Under the pieces are notes generated by a model that saw only the letters and a program-made list of their open reading frames with translations, did no database searches and was not told where the DNA came from. A DNA stretch of 46,976 nucleotides from NCBI RefSeq assembly GCF_001194135.2, contig NC_068985.1, positions 66,074,939 to 66,121,914 on the forward strand. The letters are read 5' to 3'. A program made the translations under genes and the position numbers. Positions 2,186 through 44,662 of this stretch are shown here, in pieces. The stretch's first letter is position 1. Each line of letters opens with the position of its first letter. This DNA comes from Octopus bimaculoides (lineage: Eukaryota).

Positions 2186-2690
2186 TGGGACCTACTAGTG
2201 GCGTCTGGTTTGTGTATAACCTTGCTACTAGTTCTTGTGTTAAGAATAATTTAACGTACGTTAGCGCTTTCGGATCAAGGATCATTCACCAGACGTTCCA
2301 TATGGTGGTTATTGCTCGTTGGTCAAAAGCTCCGGAAGCAGTAGATGAATTTCCAGCCGTTAAGTTCATTCCGGCGGTTGAAGCTTGGTGTTCTCTTCTT
2401 GATGGAATGTGCTTCCTTTATTCGTAGGTTGACTGTATCTATTCCACTTGCCTGTGTACGGGTGGCAATCCCTATCATAGTGCTGATGGTGTTGGAATAC
2501 GGCGCTGGGTGGTGTGGCCTTGTAGGGGTGTTCCTTCACTCTGACGTGAAGCTGTCGTTTTGTCGATCCTATATATGTTTCACCGCAAGTACATATCATT
2601 TCGTATATCACGTAAGTTTCAAGGCATAGTTGGACGCTGTCCATTGGCTGTTTTTCTTTGAAAGGGTATTGATTCAAATAGCATGTGTCC
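2186..2690 (-). mobile_element. Penelope-like element 3' end: GIY-YIG endonuclease plus 3' non-coding region
   Basis: The ORF 2366-2677 contains YVIYEMICTCGETYIGSTKRQLHVRVKEH. After a frameshift it continues LRIKEAHSIKKRTPSFN. This is the PLE GIY-YIG pattern Y..C.C...YIG.T.R.L..R..EH...L.I.EA..I....P.LN. Confidence 0.85.
2258..2296 (-). ncRNA. Minimal type I hammerhead ribozyme, degenerate (core CUGGUGA)
   Basis: Minus strand reads ACGU-CUGGUGA-AUGAUCCUUGAUCC-GAAA-GCGC-UA-ACGU: a 4-bp stem I, a GAUC/GAUC stem II and a palindromic stem III. It lies just downstream of the PLE GIY-YIG coding region. Confidence 0.7.
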
Positions 2691-2699
2691 AGTGTGTTA

Positions 2700-3490
2700 T
2701 TATTGTGGGAGAGGTCGTGTCACATTATCCTCAATTCCAATATCCTTCAGCCTCTTAGGTAGGAGTTAGCATGTTGTGCGAAGTGCACGTATTTCCACAT
2801 AATCATCTTAGTCTTCCAGTCACTTCATCTCCCCGAAAAGGTCCTGATATTATTCAATTTTTCAGTTTCTTTGGCATATACTCTATTATATAGTATTGTA
2901 AAGTCTATGACCTTACATTATTTCTATTGTCTTCTCTAATCATATCTGGTCATTCTACTTTAATATCAGAGTCAGTCACTATGTAGCAGTCCCTCCACAT
3001 TTTGTAATTCTTATTCTGTCACGACCTCTGGTTCATGTTCATATCCCTTTTCTGTGACTTGGACTCCACATACTAGGCTAACATACAAATTAAATCTTTT
3101 ACCTACCCTGTCATCCCTGCTCTTATACTCTTTTTGCGCTAGCTTTCTGCATTTACCGAATAGATAGCTAATACTTTCATGTCCTTCCCGCAGTTTCTGC
3201 GTTTGCTCGCTGACTGAGTCTACGTCTTTATCAAATCCGCCCTAATGGCTTCTTCCCAAGCGGCTACAATCAGCGATTTGATATTCCTTTGCAGGTCTCT
3301 GCCATCAGCCACAACGAACATTCTTTATTTCCAACATCCTCTATTTGTTGCATGAATTTCTCATGCAATTCATTCTCTTTCCAGCTCCTTGTTCTGTTTT
3401 TCTTCCTTCTGTTCTTGAAAACTCCTAATGTTTCAATAACCGTTTGTACATTTCTAGCCACCGGTAGCATTCTTTCTTCACTATGTACAA
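2700..3490 (-). mobile_element. R4/Dong-clade LINE C-terminal fragment (post-RT region, CCHC knuckle remnant, restriction-like endonuclease)
   Basis: Minus-strand translation across frameshifts gives RSWKENELHEKFMQQIE...SLWL...LIVAAWEEAI...CRKLAQKEYKSRDDRV...YEHEPEVVTE...VTDSDIKVE*PDMI...VEIRALRT. This matches WKEK.LHGQF / AAQEQA / LA.KEYK.RHD.V / YEH.PE / RPDIV / VIGALGT. Confidence 0.85.
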
Positions 3491-4650: not shown

Positions 4651-5738
4651 GTGCGCATGTGTGCATATACAAAATGAAGCACAGATATACAATAGTGCAT
4701 GCACCCTCACATAAACATACATGATCATATCTATAGCTAGCAGCCAAATAATATAAAAAAGAAGGGTAATGAAAATTTTTAGAAATGTTTATTCTCTGAT
4801 ATATGTTATTGATTTTTTTAATTCAACATCTTTGTTATCTTTGCTGCTAAAATAAGAGAAATATATTCTTTGATGAGCCTTTGCATTAATCAAGTTAACA
4901 CGGAAAACACTTATTATCACTTTATATAATCTCGGATAAAAGTTGAAAAGCAATATAAATACAAAACAGTTATAAAAAAAACAAAAAAAAAATAGTTGCG
5001 AAAGTAGTTGCAGTGGTAGGAACATCAATATTCACAACTACGATGCAAAACTACAATTTTAATAGCGATCAACAGAAATGTCAATGATGAAGTAAAAGTA
5101 TTTTATGAAATATTGGAAAGTAATTATAGTTTTCTTAGAAACTCTCTTCTACAAGCTGAGTGATTTATCATATAGTGACGAAAAGATGGATAAGACTGGG
5201 AAAATGAGTATGATGTGATTTTGTTCTCAGTTGCCGCATTGTTTACCGCGCACACGAAATATTTGGATATATATTTTGTACCTTATTAATATCTCGAACA
5301 GTTTTAAGCTGATTACAACACATTAATACCGAGGAAATAGAATTGTTATCTTGATACATTGAAAATCGATATTGAAATCTAAAAAGGAAATTAGATTTAC
5401 TATAATTATCGAACAATAATTTCAATAATTTTCTTTTTTTTTCTCAAATTAAGTAGAGGCAATTATTACATGCTTTAGGAAAGACTAAATATGAAAGCAG
5501 AATAAAATAAAATTAATTAAAGCTGAACAGAAATGATGCATAAATTCATGTATCAATCTTCTACGTATATTGCATCAGTCGTATATATTTGTTTTAAAAA
5601 AAACATGCGCGTACATAAACATGACTTATGTGATAGCAAACACCGGGGAAATGAAAGCAATTTCGAAAATTGATGAATGTAAGAGCAGAAAATTATATAA
5701 ATTACATAGTATATATGAACAGACAACATTAGGTTTGA

Positions 5739-6539: not shown

Positions 6540-7970
6540 TAAGGAAATCCCTGACACAGTGAGAACTGCTCGTAACTGGAAGGCATCAGAAATAGATATG
6601 GTCTCCGACTCTAGGTTGAAACTCCTCACCAATACCAATGAACACAGCGGCTGCACGTAACGAAATACATAACAGATCAGTCTCATCACTTGACTGGATG
6701 CTAGTAAGGATAAAAACACTCTGACCCAACGCTATACACCCTCAAATTTATAGACCAGTAACATGCCTACCACTAACATATAAAGCTCTCATATCAATAG
6801 CGCACAATCGGTCAGTTACACATTGAGAAAACAGTAATACTTTACCAGAAAAAAAAAAAAAAAAAAAAAATGGATACCGGAAAGTTTTGCATAGTTGTGA
6901 AGTGTTGCTACTGCTGAACCGGGCCTTTATAAGAGATCGTAAAAAGGAAAACAAACCTCTCTCTTGTAAGGATTGACTGTCAGAAAGCTTTCGATAGTCA
7001 ACATGGTCACTAGAATACCACGTAAATGAAGTAGTCGCAATATTGCTGAAGTATATCAGTGGTGCAATGACTAAGTGGAAAACTAACCTAATATTGAAAA
7101 AATGGGAGAAGTCCATTCAAACCAGCCCCGTGTCCTTAAAAAGAGGAACTTTCTAAGGAGTCTCATTATCCTCCCTACTTTTCTTCCTTTACGACCCACC
7201 ACCAGGCACATATACTATGGACAAATTATAAATTATCTCATGTATAGGGTCGACTTTAAATCTTTTCAAGCAATTCTTTTATTCTTTTACTTGTTTCAGT
7301 CATTTGACTGTGGCCATGCTGGAGTACCGCCTTCAGACGAACAAATCGACCCCAAGACTTATTTTTTGTAAGACTAGTAGTTATTCTATCGGTTCCTTTT
7401 GCTGAACCGCTAAGTTACGGAGACACAAACACACCAATATCGGTTGTCAAGCGATGGCGGGGGGGGGGGAACACACACACACACACACACACACACACAG
7501 CACAGATGAGGATAAAATGTGCCAAGTTAACTTTAAGAAGAGATAAATTAACCAGTACTGAGAATATAGCACTAGCCATAGACACTGAAATTAGAAAATT
7601 AGGCCACAGTCACCTAGGAATAGACGAAACAGCTAAAATACAACACACAGAAATGAAAGAAAACGTATGGAAGAGTACAGCAGAAAAGTTAGACTAAAAC
7701 TAAAATTTGGACTTAATACTAGAAGATAAGGTTAAATATGCTACTTATACCAGTTATAAAATTTTAGACAAAAGAGAAAAAAAAGCAGGAAACTGTTAAC
7801 ATTTTATCGAAGTCATCAGCCCAAGCAGATTTAGATAGAACCTATCTTGCTTTCTTGGAGGATATGGTCTCACGCAAACAGAAATCTACTATGAAATAAC
7901 AACATTCAGACTGGAAAAATGTTTAGAAATTAAGAATGCCGAGTATTACCATATGAGGCTAACGATATTA
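6540..7970 (+). mobile_element. R4/Dong-clade LINE reverse transcriptase region, decayed, interrupted by a SINE at ~7275-7503
   Basis: Colinear motifs across frameshifts: RNWKASEIDM, RPVTCLPLTYKAL, RIDCQKAFDS, MTKWKTNL, KRGTF*G.SLS, YLMYRVDFKSF (the YMDD position). After the SINE: KCAKLTL...HLGIDE..KIQHTEMKE...EYSRKVRL.LK..LN and GGYGLTQTE. Confidence 0.85.
7275..7503 (-). mobile_element. SINE, 3' half (same family as 8421-8877), inserted in the Dong RT
   Basis: ttcttttacttgtttcagtcatttgactgtggccatgctggagtaccgcc...(CA)n aligns with 8431-8640. Confidence 0.9.
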
Positions 7971-8420
7971 GTAGTGAAAATATCACTGGTGATCTGCGTT
8001 TATGTCAACCTGAAGAGCTTATATAAGCGGACTCACAGGCACATACACAAACTACAATCACACGCTTGATGTCACAATGCTACCCAGCAAAATAAGCGGA
8101 CAGACAAAAATTCCTGAACAAAATGCCAGTCTGTTGCAAGGCCGAGATTATGGTGCTTTGTTAAGTACCAAGTTCTGCCGACAAAGTACTTGTGCTTGGC
8201 TGTTCAAGCATTTGAAGCAAGGTCTCATCTTCCAGATTTTTACATCAATGGTTTAAATCACATCAAATGTTTAATCAAATACACAGCCTTCCATGATTGT
8301 TTCCATTTGTCGTTTAGAAATATATTCGTTGACCGATAATTTAATAACTGTTTTTGCAAGTTGTTGAAGTTATCTAATGACCCAGCAGTTCCTTGAAGTT
8401 ACAGCTAATTTGAAATATAT

Positions 8421-8877
8421 ATTCTTTTCTTTTATTCTTTTACGTGTTTCAGTCATTTGATTGCAGCCATACTGGAGCATCGCCTTTAGCCGAAAAAATC
8501 GACCCCAAGATTTATTCTTTGTAAGCCTAGAGTACTATCAGTCTCTTTTGCCGAACTGTTATGTTACGGGGACGTAAACACAGCAGCACCAGTTGTCAAA
8601 CGGTGGGGACAAACAGATACACACATAAATACATTCACACACACACACATGCACACACACGCACATGCATACAAACACACACGCACACACACACGCACAC
8701 ACAGGCACATATATATACGACGGGCTTCTTTCGGTTTACGTCTATCAAATCCACTCACAAGACTTTGGTCGGCCCGAGGCTATAGTAGAAGACACTTGTC
8801 CAATGTGTCAAGCAGTGGGACTGAACTCAGAACCATGTTGAAAGGCAAGCTTCTTACCACATAGCCACGCCTGCGCC
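8421..8877 (-). mobile_element. Full-length tRNA-derived SINE with an internal (TG)n and an AAAG/AATA-rich tail
   Basis: Minus-strand head ggcgcaggcgtggctatgtggtaag, A-box-like TGGCTATGTGG (8857-8867), B-box-like GAGTTCAGTCCC (8817-8828), and a 3' tail ...atgactgaaacacgtaaaagaataaaag. Confidence 0.9.
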
Positions 8878-8914
8878 TATATATTCACTTATTCTCAATT
8901 TTTCTTACACTTAC

Positions 8915-14810: not shown

Positions 14811-15904
14811 AAATGCAATTTTAGACATTTACTCATCTTTCTTTTTATTAAAAAGCAGCTTGAGAGGAATCTGGGGTACAGAGCTGATATTTTAGACATC
14901 AACTAGATACAGAAGTTGTATATCGGCTTTATCAAAAACTCATAAAGATCCGATACACACCATATAGGAAGAGGCCTTTTATGTTTATACACAAGATCCT
15001 TAAAGCTCTAAACAGCCTTGCACATCCCTTTTTCTACTATTTTCTTGCTATAGTCCCATTTACTATTAATGTCAGCATATGTCATCATTTTCTCACTATT
15101 ATCCTTACCTGTTCCCTTGTGCGCCACTATCTAATGGCACATAACTGGGAACTGTCCAACTATTCTACATCTAGAACGTACTATTTAAGTACGATCAACT
15201 CTGAAATTTTTCACATACTCTACCTTCTAATCGCGTTTATACAACAATATGCTTCCTGGTGTAAAGAGTATTGTACATAATGCGATATATCATATCAGAG
15301 AATTCCAAACTCAATCCACCAGCGTATAATGAGTAGTATTAAGAACCACACAGCTAGGTAGCAATACAATGAAATACAGTCGTGATCTTTATGCGCTGAA
15401 GCATAGCGAACAGTCTAAACACATCGTCTTGCGATCATGTGGCGTTTATACATACAGTCACCCAGACTTCATATGAACTACCCAATACGATGGGCATAAA
15501 CCGTTAAAAGCCTTTCGTGCAATGCCGCAGCAGTCCTTCCTTACCAGTACTATAGACTCTGATCACACCAACACTGTGATCACACCAGAGTTATACAATC
15601 AGACATAACCTATTGTAAATTTTATTCTCCAGGTTACATCTCCTGACGGTGCATGCCTACACTTATGATTATACTGCTATGATGCCAAGAATTTAAACGA
15701 TGTGCTACTTTTGCTGCTGGGCTTGATCGCAAAAAGACTATGATGAGATGTGTTCATGAAAGGAGCATTAAGAAATACACAACGAAGCAATAATAGAATG
15801 AAACACTCAATCGTGCTTTAACATGTGTGAATGTACAAAACATTACTACGACAACAGCAACATTTATGAGTATCAGCGTCTGTGTACACACACACACATA
15901 GAAA

Positions 15905-15954
<50 letters not shown>

Positions 15955-16680
15955 CNNNNNNNNNNNNNNNNNNNNNNNNNNNNNNNNNNNNNNNNNNNNN
16001 NNNNNNNNNNNNNNNNNNNNNNNNNNNNNNNNNNNNNNNNNNNNNNNNNNNNNNNNNNNNNNNNNNNNNNNNNNNNNNNNNNNNNNNNNNNNNNNNNNNN
16101 NNNNNNNNNNNNNNNNNNNNNNNNNNNNNNNNNNNNNNNNNNNNNNNNNNNNNNNNNNNNNNNNNNNNNNNNNNNNNNNNNNNNNNNNNNNNNNNNNNNN
16201 NNNNNNNNNNNNNNNNNNNNNNNNNNNNNNNNNATATATATATATATATATATATATAATACGACAACAAAAGAATGAATGAGACCGATCTGTAAAATAG
16301 AGAAATTTATCTATAAATATAATGTGACAGTTAGTCGGTTGACATAATAAAACTCAGAGTTTCGGATGCTGGGGCTGAAGTCTGCTCCGGCATCTCATCA
16401 GTTCTTAAGACAAACGCTATGAAAAAACCCCGTTGAATAAAGGAAAATTACTCCAATAGGCATGGGGAAAATAATACTTCATTCATAGAATCCACATATG
16501 CACACATATACGCACACACATACACGTACGCACGCACACACACACACACACACACACACATTTATTTATATATATCTGTATACATACTCACACAAGTGTG
16601 TACATGTACATACAAACATAGATATACATATATAGGTCTACGCATACACGCACATGCACACGCATATATACCCATGCACG

Positions 16681-16960
16681 CATCACTACGCTTATATACA
16701 CATCTCTACACGCACACACACATACATACGCGGATATACAAAACGTAGTTTATATGCACATGCATATACATACACGGAAAGACGCATATACAAATAAAAA
16801 CACATATGCAAAAACGCACGCATCATTATGTTCATATATACATCTCTATACGCACATATGCATACATACGCGGATATACAAAACGTAGCCTATACACACA
16901 TGCACATACAGACGCAGATAGACGTATATACAAATAAAAACATATACGCAAAAATCATAA
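16681..16960. repeat. Two tandem diverged copies of a ~140-bp CA/TA-rich unit
   Basis: 16681-16820 and 16821-16960 share catc..ta.g...acatctcta.acgcac...catacatacgcggatatacaaaacgtag...tatacaaataaaaaca.atatgcaaaaa. Confidence 0.85.
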
Positions 16961-25019: not shown

Positions 25020-26623
25020 NNNNNNNNNNNNNNNNNNNNNNNNNNNNNNNNNNNNNNNNNNNNNNNNNNNNNNNNNNNNNNNNNNNNNNNNNNNNNNNNN
25101 NNNNNNNNNNNNNNNNNNNNNNNNNNNNNNNNNNNNNNNNNNNNNNNNNNNNNNNNNNNNNNNNNNNNNNNNNNNNNNNNNNNNNNNNNNNNNNNNNNNN
25201 NNNNNNNNNNNNNNNNNNNNNNNNNNNNNNNNNNNNNNNNNNNNNNNNNNNNNNNNNNNNNNNNNNNNNNNNNNNNNNNNNNNNNNNNNNNNNNNNNNNN
25301 NNNNNNNNNNNNNNNNNNNNNNNNNNNNNNNNNNNNNNNNNNNNNNNNNNNNNNNNNNNNNNNNNNNNNNNNNNNNNNNNNNNNNNNNNNNNNNNNNNNN
25401 NNNNNNNNNNNNNNNNNNNNNNNNNNNNNNNNNNNNNNNNNNNNNNNNNNNNNNNNNNNNNNNNNNNNNNNNNNNNNNNNNNNNNNNNNNNNNNNNNNNN
25501 NNNNNNNNNNNNNNNNNNNNNNNNNNNNNNNNNNNNNNNNNNNNNNNNNNNNNNNNNNNNNNNNNNNNNNNNNNNNNNNNNNNNNNNNNNNNNNNNNNNN
25601 NNNNNNNNNNNNNNNNNNNNNNNNNNNNNNNNNNNNNNNNNNNNNNNNNNNNNNNNNNNNNNNNNNNNNNNNNNNNNNNNNNNNNNNNNNNNNNNNNNNN
25701 NNNNNNNNNNNNNNNNNNNNNNNNNNNNNNNNNNNNNNNNNNNNNNNNNNNNNNNNNNNNNNNNNNNNNNNNNNNNNNNNNNNNNNNNNNNNNNNNNNNN
25801 NNNNNNNNNNNNNNNNNNNNNNNNNNNNNNNNNNNNNNNNNNNNNNNNNNNNNNNNNNNNNNNNNNNNNNNNNNNNNNNNNNNNNNNNNNNNNNNNNNNN
25901 NNNNNNNNNNNNNNNNNNNNNNNNNNNNNNNNNNNNNNNNNNNNNNNNNNNNNNNNNNNNNNNNNNNNNNNNNNNNNNNNNNNNNTATATATATATATAT
26001 ATAATTAAGATTCCATTGAATTAGGTACTCGAATTGAGGCGCCTTGCTGGGTGAGTTTAATCTTTTGTGTAGAGAAAAGCCAGTTATATGGTTCCCGTAC
26101 ATTGAAAGTCGAGTAGATTGTCTGACATTAATCGATTTATCACCATAAACTAGGATACATTTGACAAATCCCAATGGATTTGATTCTAAATGGTTGAAGG
26201 CTACATTCTACATAAAGTCTTCTAAATATAAGTTACTAGATCACTCCTCTTTTTATCCTCGTCCCCCACAATTTCCTCTGCTACTCTTATTTAATGACCC
26301 TGAAATAAATTACATTATTTTCTAAACTCATTCTGCCACAGATATAACAAAAGAAACTATGTAAATATTTTGAGTTCCATTATTGATATGAATTTGCTAA
26401 GAAAATGGTTCTATCCTTTATGTTTCTAGTCTGTGCGGTCATCTGAAGACAAGGTTTTCTTTCAAACGATATAATGTTTTCATTAATCAATTAAAGGGGT
26501 CGCTTGAAACGGCTGAATTGACACCTATACATCTTTCTTACTCATATATATATCGTCAGTGGATAATATATCCGAAAAAGAAGCAGTAATGTATTTACAT
26601 GCAGTTAAATATATGTCCAATCA

Positions 26624-26687
26624 TAGAGTGGCCAATGGTTCCGCATCTATAAAGCGCTTAGCTTTATGGCGGACTCGTCAGACTCTA
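26624..26687 (-). ncRNA. Type I hammerhead ribozyme, left arm, with two core substitutions
   Basis: Minus strand reads UAGAGU-CUGACGA-GUCCGCCAUAAAGCUAAGCGCUUUAUAGAUGC-GGAA-CCAUUG-GCC-ACUCUA. Stem I is a perfect 6 bp, but GAAA is changed to GGAA and GUC to GCC. Confidence 0.8.
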
Positions 26688-27067
26688 ATGGTGGAAAGCA
26701 TATGACCCATCTTCGAACATGAGATAGAAATCTGTTACAGTCAGTTAATATGAAAAGAAAGAATAAATTACCATTTGAGGTTTAACCAGGACCAGTTATC
26801 TCCTTTAGAACAGTTCAGTTGGCAAATGTTATGGTCGCTTAGAGCCGGAAAAAGTCCTCGTTGTCTGGTAACAGCCTAAGGGTGGAGATTCCCTGTTCAC
26901 CCCTTAAGTTCATAAGATTTTCCACCTAAACTGGTCTGAGGGAGACAACTCCACCTGGATAAACTTCAAACGTTATTTTATTCTTAGTTTACAAATTAAC
27001 AGATCCTAACGGATTTCTACCTACGGTTTGACGAGGGGTTATATGCCCTCTAACATTTGTATACGTA

Positions 27068-27135
27068 CGTATACTCTGATGAGTCCTACATGAAGCTGAG
27101 CGCTTTATGGATGCGAAACCATTGGTCAGTCTATG
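27068..27135 (+). ncRNA. Type I hammerhead ribozyme, right arm, intact core
   Basis: CUGAUGA at 27076-27082, stem II CAUGAAGC/GCUUUAUG, GAAA at 27115-27118, palindromic stem III ACCA-U-UGGU, GUC triplet at 27125-27127, and stem I UAUACU/AGUCUA (5 of 6 pairs, extended by G-U and C-G). Confidence 0.88.
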
Positions 27136-27138
27136 AGC

Positions 27139-27140
<2 letters not shown>

Positions 27141-27205
<65 letters not shown>

Positions 27206-27305
27206 ACACACGCACAACACACACACAACACACACACACACGTATATGTAGATAAGTGTACATATCTATACATATTTTATATATATATAATGTATATATA
27301 TGTGT

Positions 27306-28793: not shown

Positions 28794-29289
28794 NNNNNNN
28801 NNNNNNNNNNNNNNNNNNNNNNNNNNNNNNNNNNNNNNNNNNNNNNNNNNNNNNNNNNNNNNNNNNNNNNNNNNNNNNNNNNNNNNNNNNNNNNNNNNNN
28901 NNNNNNNNNNNNNNNNNNNNNNNNNNNNNNNNNNNNNNNNNNNNNNNNNNNNNNNNNNNNNNNNNNNNNNNNNNNNNNNNNNNNNNNNNNNNNNNNNNNN
29001 NNNNNNNNNNNNNNNNNNNNNNNNNNNNNNNNNNNNNNNNNNNNNNNNNNNNNNNNNNNNNNNNNNNNNNNNNNNNNNNNNNNNNNNNNNNNNNNNNNNN
29101 NNNNNNNNNNNNNNNNNNNNNNNNNNNNNNNNNNNNNNNNNNNNNNNNNNNNNNNNNNNNNNNNNNNNNNNNNNNNNNNNNNNNNNNNNNNNNNNNNNNN
29201 NNNNNNNNNNNNNNNNNNNNNNNNNNNNNNNNNNNNNNNNNNNNNNNNNNNNNNNNNNNNNNNNNNNNNNNNNNNNNNNNNNNNNNNNN

Positions 29290-38699: not shown

Positions 38700-41600
38700 T
38701 GTTGTGGTAGGATTACAACTACCCCTATAGACTGACACATTGTTATAAAATAAACAACTGTGAGCAAGCGGGGTAAGCAATTCACTGTAAGTCGTTGACT
38801 GAGCATTGAGTTTCGTGTAATAGTAATCGTATTGCGTCGTGTAAATATTTCTTTCCCCCTGCTTCGTGAAATTATATGTACAACATCAGGATATAAAAGT
38901 GGCGACTTGTTCGAACCTTGTGTTGGGCGTTTCATCCTTTTTTATTATGATATGAAACTAAAGAAAAAGTCGTTTTAACATGGAATTATTGGCCTCCGTG
39001 GTGCAGTTGCAACAGCAGGAACAACAACAACAACAGCAACAATAACAGAAGCAGTTACAACAGAAACTACAACAGCAACCACAGCAGCAACTACAACAAC
39101 AAGAAAACCAACAGTTGCTGTAATCAATGTTGAAGAAGTCTGAAAATACTTCAGGTTCGTACTCGTAAGACAGTGTAGCAAACTCAATTGAAGAATTCAA
39201 CTATAATCCAGAAGAAAGGATTACCTTCTCTGCATATTTCCGAAGATATAAAGACATCTTCATAGAAGAATGTAAAAATTGGTTTGATGAGAAAAAAGTA
39301 CGACTACTTTTAAGACAGTTATCCCTTGCCGAACAATATTTTATCGAAAATTTTCAGTGATAGAAGTTTCCTGTTCAATACTTGCTGGCAATGTTTAAAT
39401 TAGGTCAAAAAAGATGATGAAAACTTCGTCACTTATGCCGGGGTTGTTAACAGAAAGTGTGAAAAATTCAGATTAAATGAATTAAACCCCGACATGTTTA
39501 AATGTCTAATTTTTGTTCAAGAGCTTACTGCAAGCAAAGATGCAGATATACGTTCCCGGATATTAACAAAATTAGAACAGGACAAAAATTTAACTCTACA
39601 GGTAACAGCAGAATAATGTCAGAGGATTATAAAGCTAAAACATGACGCAGATAAAATTGAAGAAAAAGGCTGCTCTCATATTCATGCATGTCGACCGGTA
39701 ACGGATATGAAAAAGAGAAAAAAATGTCAAAACCGAATCCATGTTATGGGTGCAATGGTCTACATTTTAAAATTAACTGTCCATTTAAAAATATAAAATG
39801 CTTCAAGTGTTGGCAAGATAAATCATAAAATATCACACTGTAAAACAAAACCTAAAAAACTGATCAACAGAAAAAATAACGTAAACAGGTTATCATTGAC
39901 AAGAAATACGAACGAGTTTCAAAGGAAATGTGTGTATGTAAAAATTAATCGCACAAATGTAAAGTTACAATTGGATAGGCAGTGACATCTCGATAATGTT
40001 AACACATATACACGGAAAAAAAATCAGGAGACCTAGATTAAAAGTAACTTAAAGACTAGCACGTGGTGTTTCAGGAAAAAAATTACATTTTAATGGCGAA
40101 ATGATAAATGATATTACATTTCGTGGGAAAAACCTTAAAAGCCAAAGTTTTTGCGTTGAATGATACAACAAATTTATTCGGAACAGATTGGATGGAATTG
40201 TTTAATTTATGGTACTTCCCCATAGATCTTTTTTGTTAAAATGTGAATGATTTTCCGGCAGTACAAATAAATCGTCAGACGAATTTTAAAAAATTCAATA
40301 AAGATTTTTCCTGAAGTTCTGTCTGATGATTTAGGTCTGTGCGCCAAAACGAAGGCGAAGTTTCAAGTAAAACAAAACGCCATACCGGTATTTAAACAAA
40401 AACGAACTGTACCTTCCGCAGCGTTAGAACAGATAAAGAGTTAGAGAGACTAAAAGAAACTGAAGTCATCCCAAAAGTGGAATATAGCAAATGGGCGTCA
40501 CCAACTGTGTATGTTAGGAAAAAGAATAATAATATCAGAGTGTGTACTGATTTTTCCAGTGGTTTAAACGAATGTCTTAAAACGTGCCATTATCCGCTAC
40601 CTACCCCGGAAGACATTTGCGAAATTAAACGTGGCAAGATATTTTCTAAATTGGGTCTCTCTGACGCGCACCTACAAAATAGAGTAGACGATGAATGCTG
40701 TAAATACCTAACAATAAACACACAAAAAGGAGTGTATAAATACAACAGGTTACCATTTGGCTTAAAAGTCGCAGCAGCGAATTTTCAACAGATCATGGCT
40801 GCTATGTTAGCGGACAAATTCGAGCCCATTCTCAATGTGTGACAATGTGTTGATGTACGCACAGAGTCGTAGTGCCAGCCACACTACAGAAAGGATTACT
40901 TTCATATTAGTCACCAAGGGATTTCGAGAATGAAATCGTTAATGATAAGTTATGTATATTGGTCAAGAAATAGTGAAAGCATGCAGAGAGTGTACACTTG
41001 CTGTAAAAGCACCTACCACTAAATGGCAACCGTGGCCCAAAACAGATATTCCATGGTACAGACTGCATGTTGATTACACAGGTCCACTTAAGGGTTCAAA
41101 TTACCTTGTTGTGGTGGACAGTTTTTCAAAGTGGCCTGAATTGCATATGTGTAAAAAGCCGACATCTGCAGTTACGGTAAGTTTTTTTACACACGAATTG
41201 TTCGCTAGATATAGCATTTCTGATAGCGTTGTGTCTGATAATGGAACTCAATTTATTCAGACGAGTTGGGAAAATTTTGTAAAATGTCCGTTATCGAGCA
41301 TGTCACCACTCAGTCATATCATCCTAGGTCAAATGGATAAGCGGTTGTTTCGTAGACACTTTCAAGAGGACGTTGAAAAAGGCGAACAATGGACGATCTT
41401 GCACTTCAACAATTTCTAAGAGTGTACCGAGTAACACGTAATCCAAACACCCGTCTGGAATGTCACCCGCAAAATTGATGTTTGCAAGAAAGATCAGATT
41501 TGTTTTTGATAAGTTGATACCGAGTGAAAAATAGAAAAAAAAGGTGAAAAACAAAAATACTTCAATATTCTTCAAGTTATGTGACAAAGTTTTTTTTTGA

Positions 41601-41760
41601 AGCCTATAGATATGGTAAAGAAAGCTGGGGTGATGGTGTAATTATTAAACAAAGTGGAAGAATGATATTCCTGGTAAAAGGAAAAAAGTCGAACATAAAA
41701 GACATATTAATCAACTTAAAAAAGATTCACGGAAAAAAGAGTCACGTGAAATAAAATCTC
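38700..41760 (+). mobile_element. Ty3/Gypsy LTR retrotransposon (Mag-like clade), decayed and internally deleted, with no 3' LTR
   Basis: Candidate LTR TGTTGT...ACAACA at 38700-38885, TGGCGAC PBS-like motif at ~38900. Gag: FNYNPEE..TF..YFRRY, MFKCLIFVQ, two CCHC-like knuckles. Protease KLQLD.GSDI. RT: SKWASPTVYVRKK, RLPFGLKVAAANFQQIM. Integrase: RLHVDYTGP, VVSDNGTQF, YHPRSNG. Confidence 0.92.
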
Positions 41761-41829
41761 TATGAAAGTATTGTACGACGCGTTTTAAACTACACATTCT
41801 AGTACCAGAAAACGGAAAAGAACGGAAAC

Positions 41830-42330
41830 ACTGGTTACCAACCTCAGAGACTTTTGTGCCGCAGGAGTCTCAGTCTTGCAGCAGCACTGAAGTACAGGTT
41901 ACAATGACTTCTTTCAGGCTGTTGCTGGTGAGCTTCAACACTTTATATAGGATGATACTCCTCTCTACTGTGAATATTGAAAACTCGTATACCAAGAGTG
42001 GCCAAAATCCGTGGGAGAATGCCATGCTGATAAATCCAGGCATCACACTTGCCAGGTAGACATGACTTTACTATTGTGGATATCGATGTTTCTGGCTCTT
42101 GGTAGATTTCATGGATGGATGCTGTATCTTTCAGACTGTTATTAAACACCTTTCCCAGGTTCGTCACTATTTTTTTTGTTTTGTTTTTGACAACCTGATA
42201 TCTTCGAAAATCTTCCTTTCTGAATTAAGGTATCATTGTAGAAATTCTTCAGGAAATAATCTCTATCTGAAACGTATCTTGCATTCAGCTCTGAGTTGCA
42301 AGATTATTCTAAGCTGACTGAATTGTCTTT
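41830..42330 (-). mobile_element. HERO-like (RLE-type) non-LTR retrotransposon fragment, post-RT region
   Basis: LGKVFNNSLKDTASI...KSCLPGKCDAWIYQHGILPRIL matches the LGKVFD.SL.DT.SI...KSGLPGKFKAWIYQHGILPRILWPL pattern I recall for HERO elements. Confidence 0.75.
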
Positions 42331-42639
42331 GACTCTTCCTTCTCTGGAATCTACATCTCTTCTTTATATCACCACTGATGGGTCACCATGCCTCTCAAAT
42401 CACCCTCTGGATCCTTCAAAGCCTGTGGAATAAACAAGTTTTATACATCTTATACAGTAGATCACTCGGTCGAGAAGCTGAAATTTTCTTTGCCTTCTTC
42501 ACCCCTTTTCGGATCTCTTACCTAAAATTCTTCGCCTAAAATTGGTACAGATGGACTGATATAGGAATTACTGAGAAGAATAGGTGATATGATCGCTGCA
42601 TCTTTGCCCCAACAGCTGTACTTATTTCCTGTCTCAAAA

Positions 42640-43870
42640 ATTTTGAATGCCTATATTCAAGGACACTTTTGATTTTGTGTTCAAAATAAACAATTTTTCT
42701 AAGAAATGAAATAATGTCGAAAACTGTTTTTTAGTAATTATGGATGGCTCTTCACTATACTCCGACATTGACTGCGATGAGGGCGTGGAAGCATGTATGA
42801 ATGTTTTTGAAAAACTGTCAAACAGAAGTATTCCATCAAATTTTCTCTGTAAATTATTGAAGTTTATGTTACAATGTAACGTAATTAAGTATGGACAAAA
42901 TTTTATCGCCAGGGGTGGGTGGAGATGCGCCATTGTCAACTCCATGGCAGTTAAATTAACTAATGTCTTCATGACAAAGTTTGAGACACAATTAATGGAG
43001 AAATTCAAATTCCTGCTCTATCATGAAAGTATACTTTAGTTTCGGTTCACTGATGACGATTTGTTTGTTTGTTGCAGGAGAGTTTAGTTAACATTGCATT
43101 TCTGTGACTGCTTCGCAAAAACTATGGCTTTAAGAATATAGAATTCTTGTAGTTTTAAAAATATTTTGTAAACCCACGTCATCTCAAATTTATTTTACAG
43201 CCGCGCCGAGCATCCACATCATACAATTAAGTCAAACCCGAACTCCCGGATTTTAAGGATAAAATGGATTTGTACTGACATAGGGGATTAGTAGAGATGC
43301 TTTTGTGAGTCATTATATAAAACACGGTTATAATGAATCAGGATTAAAGGAAATAGTAAATTACATAGATAAAATTAAAAGGAAATTCAAACCCTCACGC
43401 CTAATTTTAGCAACCATAATAATAAAATTAACGACCAAATTCCTTCATTGATTAACTGGCACCGAAATTTCGTTGGCAATTCAAAGGTGTAGTATGAAAG
43501 TTACTAGCATGTTTTAGAAAAACATTTCCGTTTCAAACAAATATTCCCTCATTCACCTATTATAGCCTTTAGATGCTATAAAAATATAAGAGAGTTATTA
43601 ACCATTATCTCTAAACCGAATAAAATCTCCATTGGAGTTTTTGAACGTTGTATCCCTGAAAAAAAAAAAAGCCGCAAGGCTGCTAAACATTGCTCATTGT
43701 ACAACAACACGAGCAAAGTTATTCTAATTACAAATTATAACGGAAATGTTATGATTTATACAAAAGGTGGGACGTGTAAGGATTCCAATTTGGTGTTCGC
43801 AGTAGAATGCACCAAACTCGACTTGATTTATGCTAGCTGCACAACAAAAAATTACTGGTACTTAATTTAT
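42640..43870 (+). mobile_element. Neptune-like Penelope element, RT through GIY-YIG, decayed
   Basis: LVIMDGSSLYSDIDCDEGVEAC, MAVKLTNVFMTKFE, RFTDDDL, EHPHHTIKS...LRIKWIC and CKDSNLVFAVECTK...YASCT occur in the expected order. Confidence 0.82.
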
Positions 43871-44534
43871 CTTCCTAGAAAGGTTGAAAGACAAAGTCGA
43901 CCTCGGAAGAACTTGAGCTCAGAATGTAAAGACGGACGTAATGCCGCTAAAGCAAACGGCACATATTCTGTGAAGGATGACCGGATTTCTTCGTCTTATT
44001 CAATAGGACATCTGTTTGAATTCTTCTGAAAATTGCTCGAATTGCTAATCATGCACGTAGGGTCTATCGTGAATCACTTTGCTAACCGCACCCTGTCGCA
44101 ACGGGAATGCATTTAACCGAGGCTGTACGTTGGTTTGTATAAGTTTGGATTTTCTAGCATTGTCACTTTTTTGAGTATGTTTTCTAATATAATTGTAGAT
44201 GCAGGATTTTACAAAATACGATAATAAGCCGATAGCATCAAATATAATCGAGGCAAAAGTCGGAGTGGTGTGAGGAGATATGTCATATAACAGAGTGTCG
44301 TGCCGGAAATAATTACTTTATTTCCGGCTGCAACAGCAAAAGTTAAAATGATAACAATGACACGAACAATACTGGATTAAGATTCAATATAGAAAATCTA
44401 ATTATGGTAGTAAAAGTTCTTTTGAACACGTATATATACATATATAACGCAATAATAACATACACACATATAGATGTGCGCGTAAGTATAAATCTATGAA
44501 CATTTATATTATGTATATACAAACACAACCCGCC

Positions 44535-44549
44535 ATACACACACACACT

Positions 44550-44586
<37 letters not shown>

Positions 44587-44592
44587 CATATA

Positions 44593-44662
<70 letters not shown>

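What the first reader, a model, noticed from the sequence alone, without database searches (positions are those of the whole stretch)
26614..27143. ~530-bp fold-back element with a hammerhead ribozyme on each strand (viroid-like or retrozyme-like architecture)
Seen: two diverged arms (about 75% identical inside, about 84% over the ribozyme) are inverted around a ~77-nt spacer that has its own small hairpin (taagggtg/cacccctta). Each arm ends outward in a type I hammerhead followed by ctatga-nn-ggaca and then (CA)n or TA-rich sequence. There is no credible ORF. A transcript from either strand would fold into a long imperfect rod in which its own hammerhead pairs with the antisense of the other. 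Established: rod-like viroid and satellite RNAs carry ribozymes of both polarities paired against each other; animal non-LTR retrozymes and Penelope pLTRs carry type I hammerheads, usually in direct tandem repeats; Penelope elements can also make inverted ends. Inference: this is either an integrated copy of an ambisense ribozyme-bearing RNA mobilised by Penelope RTs (abundant in this window), a non-autonomous fold-back PLE derivative, or two independent insertions that landed head-to-head. I know no description of this arrangement in cephalopods, but I cannot search.
Basis: partly seen in the sequence, partly recalled or inferred. Interest (0 to 1): 0.85.

Follow-up and report, generated by a model that had tools for sequence, protein, structure and literature searches.

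The report
Decayed head-to-head Penelope-type ribozyme repeat
This is most likely an old, dead, head-to-head double insertion of the ribozyme-bearing 3' end of a Penelope-type retroelement in an octopus-like genome, an arrangement already described for these elements, and not a viroid-like entity.

Summary
The fold-back is real. Arms 26614-26833 and 26911-27143 are inverted, 77% identical, and separated by a 77-nt spacer with a small hairpin. Both arms end outward, exactly 16 nt past a hammerhead-like motif (...GGACA). The right end abuts (CA)n and the left end is TA-rich.

Only the right arm keeps a complete type I hammerhead core. The left arm carries two core substitutions (A13G, U16.1C). 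Rfam reports no hammerhead, even at E<=10.

The unit occurs once in the window. No copy could be retrieved elsewhere, because the tools gave me only about 20 kb of octopus DNA.

The anatomy matches published Penelope-like element (PLE) insertions on these points:
- hammerhead near the 3' end
- an adjacent inverted 5'-truncated copy, head-to-head
- a palindrome at the inverted junction
- microsatellite flanks

Symmetric termini fit two 3' ends better than a copied circular RNA. One dead ribozyme and the absence of tandem units mean this locus cannot yield unit-length or circular RNA by self-cleavage.

Verdict: a new member of a known kind, of low interest. It remains untested whether a distinct fold-back family exists genome-wide.

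The parts
26614..26833 (-). Left arm: inverted copy of the element's 3'-terminal ~220 nt, with its 3' end pointing left and outward
   Evidence: 77% identical to the reverse complement of 26911-27143.
26624..26687 (-). Left hammerhead remnant, core broken. It reads CUGACGA, but GGAA replaces GAAA (A13G, at 26641) and C replaces U16.1 (at 26631). The would-be C17 is 26630.
   Evidence: RNAfold prefers an alternative UCCGC/GCGGA pairing.
26614..26629 (-). Left 16-nt tail after the would-be cleavage site (ACUCUAUGAUUGGACA). It is the 3' strand of helix I plus the terminus ...GGACA.
26834..26910 (.). 77-nt spacer between the arms, with no detectable homology between its two halves. It may be extra 5' sequence of one copy or junction filler.
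26877..26906 (.). Small hairpin or palindrome at the inverted junction (TAAGGGTG, 13-nt loop, CACCCCTTA). It overlaps the inner (5') end of the right arm.
   Evidence: and the MFE. Palindromes at PLE inverted junctions are described in PMC3846280.
26911..27143 (+). Right arm: direct copy of the element's 3'-terminal ~233 nt, with its 3' end pointing right and outward
27060..27073 (.). Perfect 14-nt palindrome TATACGTACGTATA. Bases 27060-27072 are the only indel between the arms (present on the right, absent on the left). It sits just 5' of helix I.
27070..27133 (+). Right type I hammerhead motif with an intact core:
- helix I UAUACU/AGUCUA
- CUGAUGA
- a long, imperfect helix II (G-C, UCC/GGA with a UG bulge, then a 7-bp tip AUGAAGC/GCUUUAU)
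- GAAA
- helix III ACC-AUU-GGU
- C17 at 27127, with predicted cleavage between 27127 and 27128
   Evidence: Descriptor hit. Pair counts show 92.5% of cells paired. The hammerhead structure scores -6.6 kcal/mol against an MFE of -17.3. No Rfam hit.
27128..27143 (+). Right 16-nt tail after the predicted cleavage site (AGUCUAUGAGCGGACA), the terminus of the element
27141..27241 (+). (CA)n microsatellite directly abutting the right terminus. It is either the target site or a 3' tail, and is not part of the repeat. (TA)n and (TG)n follow up to 27421.
   Evidence: TRF.

Best explanation
This is an old, inactive insertion made by Penelope-like-element (PLE) machinery.

**What it is.** Two copies of the hammerhead-bearing 3'-terminal ~220-270 nt of one retroelement family lie head-to-head. 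That region would be a pLTR or a non-autonomous, retrozyme-like derivative. The 5' ends meet at a small palindromic junction and the 3' ends point outward into microsatellite or AT-rich DNA.

**How it arose (inferred).** A GIY-YIG endonuclease nicks the target, and reverse transcription is primed at the element's defined 3' end (...GGACA). A second, inverted, 5'-truncated copy is made in the same event by self-priming or template switching. This is the route proposed for the inverted pLTRs of PLEs.

**Role of the ribozyme (inferred from the literature).** The hammerhead is a cis element of the family. Such hammerheads are thought to process transcripts of tandem units, and to act as dimers through a quasi-palindromic helix III.

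**State of this locus.** It is a relic.
- The arms differ by 23%.
- The left ribozyme core is mutated.
- There is no tandem partner.
- In any read-through transcript the intact ribozyme would be locked in a ~220-bp imperfect hairpin.

**Shown here:** the anatomy, the broken left core, the sequestration in the fold, and the absence of an ORF.

**Inferred:** mobilisation by PLE enzymes and a single-event origin.
For: - The inverted arms are far beyond chance.
- Both arms end at the same position, 16 nt after the hammerhead site, in ...GGACA.
- A complete type I hammerhead core sits in the right arm. It was the only descriptor hit in the window: 0.09 hits expected per shuffled window, and it lies exactly at the arm terminus.
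- Helix I shows one compensatory C-G/G-C change between the arms.
- Helix III ACCAUUGGU is quasi-palindromic (self-duplex -10.3 kcal/mol).
- Helix II is long and bulged. Metazoan PLE hammerheads have these traits and escape standard descriptors (PMC4209133).
- There is a hairpin at the inverted junction. 'Palindromes at the inverted junction' with head-to-head arrangement are reported for PLEs (PMC3846280).
[quoted passage not shown] Here (CA)n abuts the right end.
- The window is octopus-like: several repeats share 75-89% nucleotide identity with an Octopus sinensis chromosome. Penelope is among the abundant old repeat families of octopus genomes (PMC8967140).
- Rfam-type hammerhead 1 motifs were already counted in a squid genome (PMC6962438).
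Against: - No sequence link to an autonomous PLE was found. The arms match neither PLE remnant in the window.
- No other copy could be retrieved.
- Rfam hammerhead models do not score the motif.
- No target-site duplication was found.
- 23% divergence between the arms, plus a compensatory change in helix I, could mean two different source copies rather than one event.
- Only the right end touches a microsatellite.
Confidence: 0.62

Rival explanations
1. Two independent insertions of the same hammerhead-bearing retroelement family landed head-to-head at one microsatellite-rich hotspot at different times.
For: - The arms are 23% diverged, and one helix I pair changed on both sides (C-G to G-C). 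This hints that the arms come from different functional source copies.
- The 77-nt spacer is unrelated to either arm and could be original target DNA.
- Microsatellites are very dense here, about 45 arrays in 44 kb, and PLEs prefer them (PMC8557442).
Against: - Chance head-to-head landing within 77 nt is unlikely unless the family is very abundant, yet no other copy exists in 47 kb of the window or about 20 kb of O. sinensis.
- The small palindrome at the junction fits a single self-primed event (PMC3846280).
- One compensatory pair among 20 is not significant.
Confidence: 0.15
2. It is a distinct non-autonomous fold-back family. The whole ~530-bp hairpin unit (two arms plus spacer) is the mobile unit, copied by PLE enzymes, with a ribozyme available on either transcript.
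For: - The termini are symmetric and the rod folds strongly on both strands.
- The ribozyme-plus-tail block is the best-conserved part, 82% against 75%.
- PLE pLTR sequences alone suffice for mobilisation in trans (PMC3846280).
Against: - It is single-copy in all DNA I could search.
- One ribozyme is dead.
- The conservation difference is not significant (p=0.23).
- A hairpin transcript would sequester the ribozyme.
- The ordinary PLE insertion mechanism already produces this shape.
Confidence: 0.1
3. It is a DNA copy of a viroid-like or deltavirus-like circular RNA that carries hammerheads of both polarities, reverse-transcribed and integrated by a PLE reverse transcriptase.
For: - In rod-like hammerhead RNAs the plus and minus ribozyme domains lie opposite each other, which at the DNA level is an inverted repeat like this one (established knowledge of Avsunviroidae).
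- Hammerhead-bearing HDV-like circles exist in invertebrates (PMC7936874).
Against: - Both arms end at exactly the dyad-symmetric position 16 nt past the sites. That is expected for two 3' ends and improbable for an arbitrarily opened circle.
- The left core is broken (A13G, U16.1C).
- The helix III type is that of genomic metazoan type I and PLE ribozymes (PMC4209133).
- There is no coding capacity and no RNA evidence is available.
Confidence: 0.03
4. The hammerhead resemblance is fortuitous. The element is an unrelated inverted duplication, or a MITE or Foldback-type DNA transposon with long terminal inverted repeats.
For: - No Rfam hammerhead hit even at E<=10.
- My permissive descriptor hits 6% of shuffled windows somewhere.
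- The hammerhead fold is not the MFE of the motif (-6.6 against -17.3 kcal/mol).
Against: - The full motif lies exactly at the conserved terminus of the arm. It comprises CUGAUGA, the G10.1-C11.1 pair, GAAA, a 3-bp helix III, C17 and a 6-bp helix I. The chance of that within about 100 nt is roughly 1e-4, scaled.
- The homologous arm keeps all but two core positions.
- No target-site duplication of any DNA-transposon type flanks the unit.
Confidence: 0.08

Closest known systems
Inverted pLTR / head-to-head insertions of endonuclease-containing Penelope-like elements (e.g. Pen2a_Av of Adineta vaga, PMC3846280; general scheme in PMC8557442, fig. 2)
   Same: - ~200-bp terminal repeats in inverted orientation, immediately adjacent, with heads inward and 3' ends outward.
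- A palindrome at the inverted junction.
- A hammerhead in the repeat near the 3' end.
- A microsatellite flank.
- A short extension beyond the ribozyme.
   Different: - No RT/GIY-YIG ORF and no second direct pLTR follows the right arm, so only the inverted pair is present.
- No target-site duplication was found.
- No sequence link to a coding PLE has been shown.
- The arms are strongly diverged.
Animal non-LTR retrozymes and Smalpha-like type I hammerhead repeats (PMC7229834; bioRxiv 10.64898/2026.07.22.740005)
   Same: - Short (~200-350 nt), AT-rich and non-coding.
- Carry a type I hammerhead with a weak, quasi-palindromic helix III.
- Thought to derive from PLE pLTRs.
- Solo 'monomer' copies are common in genomes.
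   Different: Retrozymes are defined by tandem direct repeats, each with a ribozyme, which allows excision and circularisation. Here the two units are inverted, one ribozyme is dead, and no unit-length RNA can be released.
Minimal or atypical hammerheads of metazoan PLEs (PMC4209133)
   Same: - Long helix II with bulged bases.
- Short helix III with palindromic character, suggesting action as dimers.
- Not found by standard descriptors.
   Different: - Helix II here is longer (about 11 pairs with two bulges, 32 nt).
- Helix I can extend to about 6 bp.
- Activity is untested.
Hammerhead arm of Avsunviroidae, the retroviroid-like CarSV, and HDV-like circles with hammerheads (PMC7936874; own knowledge for the plant agents)
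   Same: Ribozyme sequences of the two polarities lie opposite each other in a rod-like fold.
   Different: - Those agents are RNA replicons with two active ribozymes and closed ends.
- This is a chromosomal DNA repeat with open, symmetric ends abutting a microsatellite.
- It has one dead core and the hallmarks of retroelement 3' ends.

Membership tests
Hammerhead ribozyme, type I | Conserved core C3-U4-G5-A6-N7-G8-A9 ... G12-A13-A14 ... A15.1-U16.1, H17 | tested here: met
   Right arm only: CUGAUGA, GAAA, A-U, C17 at 27127. The left arm fails: GGAA (A13G) and C at 16.1.
Hammerhead ribozyme, type I | Three helices around the core, helix I open (type I), helices II and III closed by loops | tested here: met
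   The structure I named pairs 92.5% of cells across the two arms, against 22-45% when partners are slid. There is one compensatory pair in helix I. Helix II is imperfect, with a UG bulge and a UAC bulge.
Hammerhead ribozyme, type I | Scores with the curated covariance models (Rfam Hammerhead_1 and relatives) | tested here: not met
   No hit at gathering score, nor at E<=10 on 901 nt or 101 nt. Atypical PLE hammerheads are known to escape descriptors (PMC4209133).
Hammerhead ribozyme, type I | Site-specific self-cleavage | not testable with these tools
   This needs in vitro transcription of the right arm as monomer and dimer.
Penelope-like element insertion (pLTR pair) | RT plus GIY-YIG ORF, or sequence identity of the repeat to the 3' end of such an element | tested here: not met
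   - There is no ORF in or next to the unit.
- The arms show no similarity to the two PLE remnants in the window or to any other window sequence.
- A genome-wide test was not possible.
Penelope-like element insertion (pLTR pair) | Adjacent inverted, 5'-truncated copy (head-to-head) with a palindrome at the junction | tested here: met
   hairpin at 26877-26906. The feature is described in PMC3846280 and PMC8557442.
Penelope-like element insertion (pLTR pair) | Hammerhead within the repeat near the 3' end | tested here: met
   The motif ends 10 nt, and the cleavage site lies 16 nt, from each outer terminus. Compare the fig. 1 legend of PMC8557442.
Penelope-like element insertion (pLTR pair) | Target-site duplication of variable length and/or microsatellite target | tested here: inconclusive
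   No duplication was found. (CA)n abuts the right end only. In PLEs duplications are often unreadable in microsatellites (PMC8557442).
Animal non-LTR retrozyme | At least two consecutive tandem direct units, each with a complete type I hammerhead | tested here: not met
   TRF finds no tandem array of the unit. The two copies are inverted and one core is broken.
Animal non-LTR retrozyme | Expressed as small circular RNA | not testable with these tools
   No transcriptome data were accessible.
Viroid-like / HDV-like ambisense hammerhead RNA | Functional ribozyme in both polarities | tested here: not met
   The left (minus-strand) core carries A13G and U16.1C.
Viroid-like / HDV-like ambisense hammerhead RNA | Exists as a circular, RNA-replicating molecule | not testable with these tools
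   This needs RNase R or total RNA-seq and northern blots.
MITE / Foldback DNA transposon | Terminal inverted repeats flanked by a fixed-length target-site duplication | tested here: not met
   The flanks are ...AAATATA| and |CACACA.... The only shared k-mer is an 8-mer, 27 nt and 145 nt away from the ends.

The most novel reading that the evidence does not exclude
The 530-bp hairpin is one copy of a previously undescribed cephalopod family in which two hammerhead-bearing PLE termini plus the spacer move together as a fold-back unit. Alternatively, it descends from an ambisense hammerhead circular RNA captured by a PLE reverse transcriptase. Either way, transcripts of either strand would carry a ribozyme and form long dsRNA.
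Probability: 0.07. Interest if true: 0.7.

Novelty: new member of a known kind. Interest (0 to 1): 0.2.

Why it matters
As it stands the finding is of limited importance. It documents, in an octopus-like genome, the known Penelope-type head-to-head repeat with a hammerhead near each outer end. It also shows that such ribozymes can be missed by Rfam models because of a long, bulged helix II.

Possible practical uses:
- a seed sequence for annotating this repeat family and its ribozyme in cephalopod genomes
- a reminder that such inverted pairs can give long hairpin RNAs, which are potential substrates for RNA editing or small-RNA pathways in cephalopods

It would bear on the origin of ribozyme-bearing mobile RNAs only if the paired unit proved to be a propagating family, or to have an RNA-circle counterpart.

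Tried and rejected
- **Rfam scans.** I ran them at gathering score and at E<=10 on 901 nt and 101 nt. There was no hammerhead; only low-complexity microRNA-like noise in the microsatellite.
- **Copies inside the window.** blastn with word size 7, a 24-mer with 3 mismatches, and a covariance model built from both arms with filters off found none. The best extra hit, 2877-2917 (E=0.45), is an AT-rich chance match on inspection.
- **Copies in public collections.** The pattern CTGANGAGTCC-N(15-30)-GATGCGAAAC gave 0 hits in viral contigs. It gave 13 hits in metagenome contigs, all unrelated GC-rich sequences.
- **Reaching copies through spurious ORFs.** A six-frame concatenated translation searched against 5.8 billion proteins gave no hit at E<=1. 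Exact look-ups of two window ORFs were not on record.
- **A PLE reverse-transcriptase-like ORF (42710-43036)** found no homologue.
- **Integrase ORF.** It led to an Octopus sinensis locus and two ENA contigs. None holds the arm or the ribozyme.
- **Target-site duplication search:** nothing convincing.
- **Higher conservation of the ribozyme block than of the inner arm:** not significant.
- **Pfam on the suspected PLE remnants:** only a sub-threshold GIY-YIG hit.
Full report
**1. What is there**

The fold-back is real.
- The repeat finder reports two collinear inverted pairs: 26687-26833 with 26911-27057 (147 nt, 75%), and 26614-26687 with 27070-27143 (74 nt, 82%).
- The self-inverse blastn match has E=5e-61.
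- A local alignment joins them into arms 26614-26833 and 26911-27143. These share 170 of 220 aligned bases (77%), with 22 transitions, 28 transversions and a single 13-nt indel.
- The indel is part of a perfect palindrome, TATACGTACGTATA, in the right arm (27060-27073).
- The 77-nt spacer (26834-26910) shows no homology between its halves. It contains the hairpin TAAGGGTG/CACCCCTTA (26877-26906), which overlaps the inner end of the right arm.
- Either strand folds into a long imperfect rod: -259.7 kcal/mol (z=-19) and -227.5 kcal/mol (z=-15).
- There is no coding capacity. The longest internal ORF is 48 aa, and a 94-aa ORF exists only because it runs through the (CA)n.
- The unit sits in a 2.8-kb contig between two assembly gaps (N runs 25020-25985 and 28794-29289). 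The 23% divergence between the arms argues against an assembly artefact.

**2. The ribozymes**

No Rfam family, hammerhead or otherwise, reaches its gathering score in the window. No hammerhead model appears even at E<=10 on 901 nt or on 101 nt around the right motif.

Read by hand, the right arm has every defining element of a type I hammerhead:
- helix I UAUACU/AGUCUA (one U-C mismatch)
- C3-A9 = CUGAUGA
- G10.1-C11.1
- G12-A14 = GAA
- helix III A15.1-C-C / G-G-U16.1 around an AUU loop
- C17 at 27127

My own permissive descriptor found this as the only hit in 47 kb, on both strands. Shuffled windows gave 0.09 hits on average, and 17 of 300 had at least one. So a hit exactly at the conserved end of the arm is very unlikely to be chance.

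Helix II is unusual. It spans 32 nt: a closing G-C pair, UCC/GGA offset by a UG bulge, a UAC bulge, and a 7-bp tip. This probably explains the Rfam silence.

Cervera and de la Pena describe metazoan PLE hammerheads in exactly these terms: a larger helix II with unpaired bases, and a short helix III of palindromic character. They also note that the Drosophila virilis variant escaped their descriptor (PMC4209133).

Other structural observations:
- Helix III here (ACCAUUGGU) is quasi-palindromic and can pair with a second copy (-10.3 kcal/mol), as expected of ribozymes that act as dimers.
- The hammerhead fold (-6.6 kcal/mol) is not the MFE of the isolated motif (-17.3 kcal/mol).

The left arm is not an intact ribozyme. 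It reads GGAA for GAAA (A13G) and has C for U16.1. From established hammerhead mutagenesis, both positions are essential. RNAfold instead pairs UCCGC with the mutated GCGGA.

Across the two arms my named structure keeps 92.5% of cells paired, against 22-45% for slid partners. There is one compensatory C-G/G-C pair in helix I. With only two sequences this is a hint, not proof.

**3. Ends and flanks**

- Both arms stop exactly 16 nt after the (would-be) cleavage site, in A(G/C)UCUAUGA-NN-GGACA.
- A 100-bp (CA)n starts at the last bases of the right terminus, followed by (TA)n and (TG)n.
- The left flank is TA-rich unique sequence.
- No target-site duplication is detectable.
- Microsatellites are extremely dense in this window, about 45 arrays. 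Direct abutment is therefore suggestive rather than compelling.

**4. Context and origin of the window**

- An integrase ORF (40949-41416, Pfam rve) finds 'uncharacterized protein K02A2.6-like [Octopus sinensis]'.
- The corresponding O. sinensis locus shares several window repeats at 75-89% nucleotide identity.
- Evidence for Penelope elements in the window itself is thin. There is one sub-threshold GIY-YIG hit (2369-2719, minus strand, E=0.0045).
- A frameshifted remnant at about 42.7-44.0 kb is one I recognise only from motifs. Pfam and the protein database gave no support for it.
- Neither remnant resembles the arms.
- The literature states that Penelope is among the abundant, ancient repeat families of octopus genomes (PMC8967140).
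- 235 Rfam hammerhead-1 loci were counted in the giant squid genome (PMC6962438).

**5. Search for other copies**

This is the decisive test, and it could not be done properly.
- There is nothing else in the window.
- There is nothing in viral contigs.
- There were only unrelated hits in metagenome contigs.
- There were no spurious-ORF relatives in the protein collection.
- There is nothing in the 62 kb of fetched loci, including about 20 kb of O. sinensis.
- The collections on hand gave me no cephalopod DNA beyond that single locus.

**6. Interpretation**

Every structural feature matches the published anatomy of PLE insertions:
- pLTRs carry hammerheads, drawn 'near the 3'-ends' (PMC8557442).
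- In Adineta vaga an 'adjacent inverted pLTR' of about 200 bp completes the insert.

The element is therefore best read as an inverted pair of PLE-type 3' termini, either pLTRs or a non-autonomous derivative. It has no internal ORF, and it is old and decayed.

The symmetric termini are what two retroelement 3' ends give automatically. For a cDNA of a circular rod they would require opening the circle precisely on its dyad axis.

The locus cannot function as a retrozyme. Those are defined by at least two tandem units with complete ribozymes (PMC7229834; bioRxiv 10.64898/2026.07.22.740005). Here the copies are inverted and one core is dead. In a read-through transcript the intact ribozyme is fully paired with the antisense of the other arm.

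**7. Rivals**

- Two independent insertions (0.15) are favoured only by the divergence and the single compensatory pair.
- A true fold-back family (0.10) and an integrated ambisense circular RNA (0.03) remain formally open, because genome-wide counts and RNA data were out of reach.
- A fortuitous motif in an unrelated inverted duplication or MITE (0.08) is disfavoured by the completeness and position of the motif and by the lack of a target-site duplication.

**8. Verdict**

The viroid-like part is not.
- This is a new member of a known kind, of low interest (0.2).
- There is a small residual chance (about 7%) that it represents a propagating fold-back or ambisense family, which would be considerably more interesting.

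Noticed in passing
window 16340-16407 (-): There is a second hammerhead-like motif: aagaaCUGAUGAG-AUGC...GCAU-CGAAA-CU-CUG-AG-U|U. It has a 5-bp helix II, a 3-bp helix III with a triloop, and only 2-3 weak pairs in helix I.
- It lies about 90 nt from an (AT)n array and an assembly gap (15956-16233).
- Rfam does not recognise it.
- Its score with my arm model is weak, 10 bits.
- It may be the 3' end of another PLE-type element, or it may be chance.
   Followed up: partly
window 2369-2719 (-), with a (GATA)n array at 1932-2186: This is a fragment of a GIY-YIG endonuclease domain (YVIYEMICTCGETYIGSTKRQLHVR; Pfam E=0.0045, below threshold). It looks like the C-terminus of a Penelope-like element. 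Its 3' side runs into a 255-bp tetranucleotide microsatellite. I saw no canonical hammerhead in its 3' region; it has CUGGUGA rather than CUGAUGA.
   Followed up: partly
window ~42600-44030 (+): This is a frameshifted remnant with PLE-like RT and linker motifs (MDGSSLYSDI, FRFTDDDLF, AFRCYKNIRELL) by my own reading. Pfam and the protein database gave no support. (CA)n and (TA)n arrays lie about 500 bp downstream, at 44537-44662.
   Followed up: partly
window 39400-41834 (+): This is an LTR-retrotransposon pol remnant (RVT_1 at 40396-40839, rve at 40949-41416). It is 78-80% identical at nucleotide level to a locus on Octopus sinensis chromosome CM016874.1 (L014).
   Followed up: yes
window 7273-7499 and 8418-8893; L014 at 2504-2917, 4697-5099, 8237-8561, 15475-15592: A short interspersed repeat is present twice in the window and at least four times in 20 kb of O. 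sinensis, at 71-89% identity. It is probably one of the abundant octopus SINE-like families. It is unrelated to the fold-back.
   Followed up: no
window 25020-25985 and 28794-29289 (N runs); 11 N runs in all: The fold-back sits on a 2.8-kb contig bounded by assembly gaps. Several gaps in the window abut microsatellites. Sequence beyond the gaps may not be reliably adjacent.
   Followed up: no
window 16676-16954: There are two copies of a 140-bp tandem unit (84% matching) in CA-rich sequence, next to the second hammerhead-like motif.
   Followed up: no
L015 and L016 (ENA assembly ERZ21867824): These 'metagenome' contigs of 78 kb and 526 kb are full of LINE, Gypsy and integrase ORFs. They are eukaryotic DNA, not microbial. 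They share no nucleotide similarity with the window.
   Followed up: no
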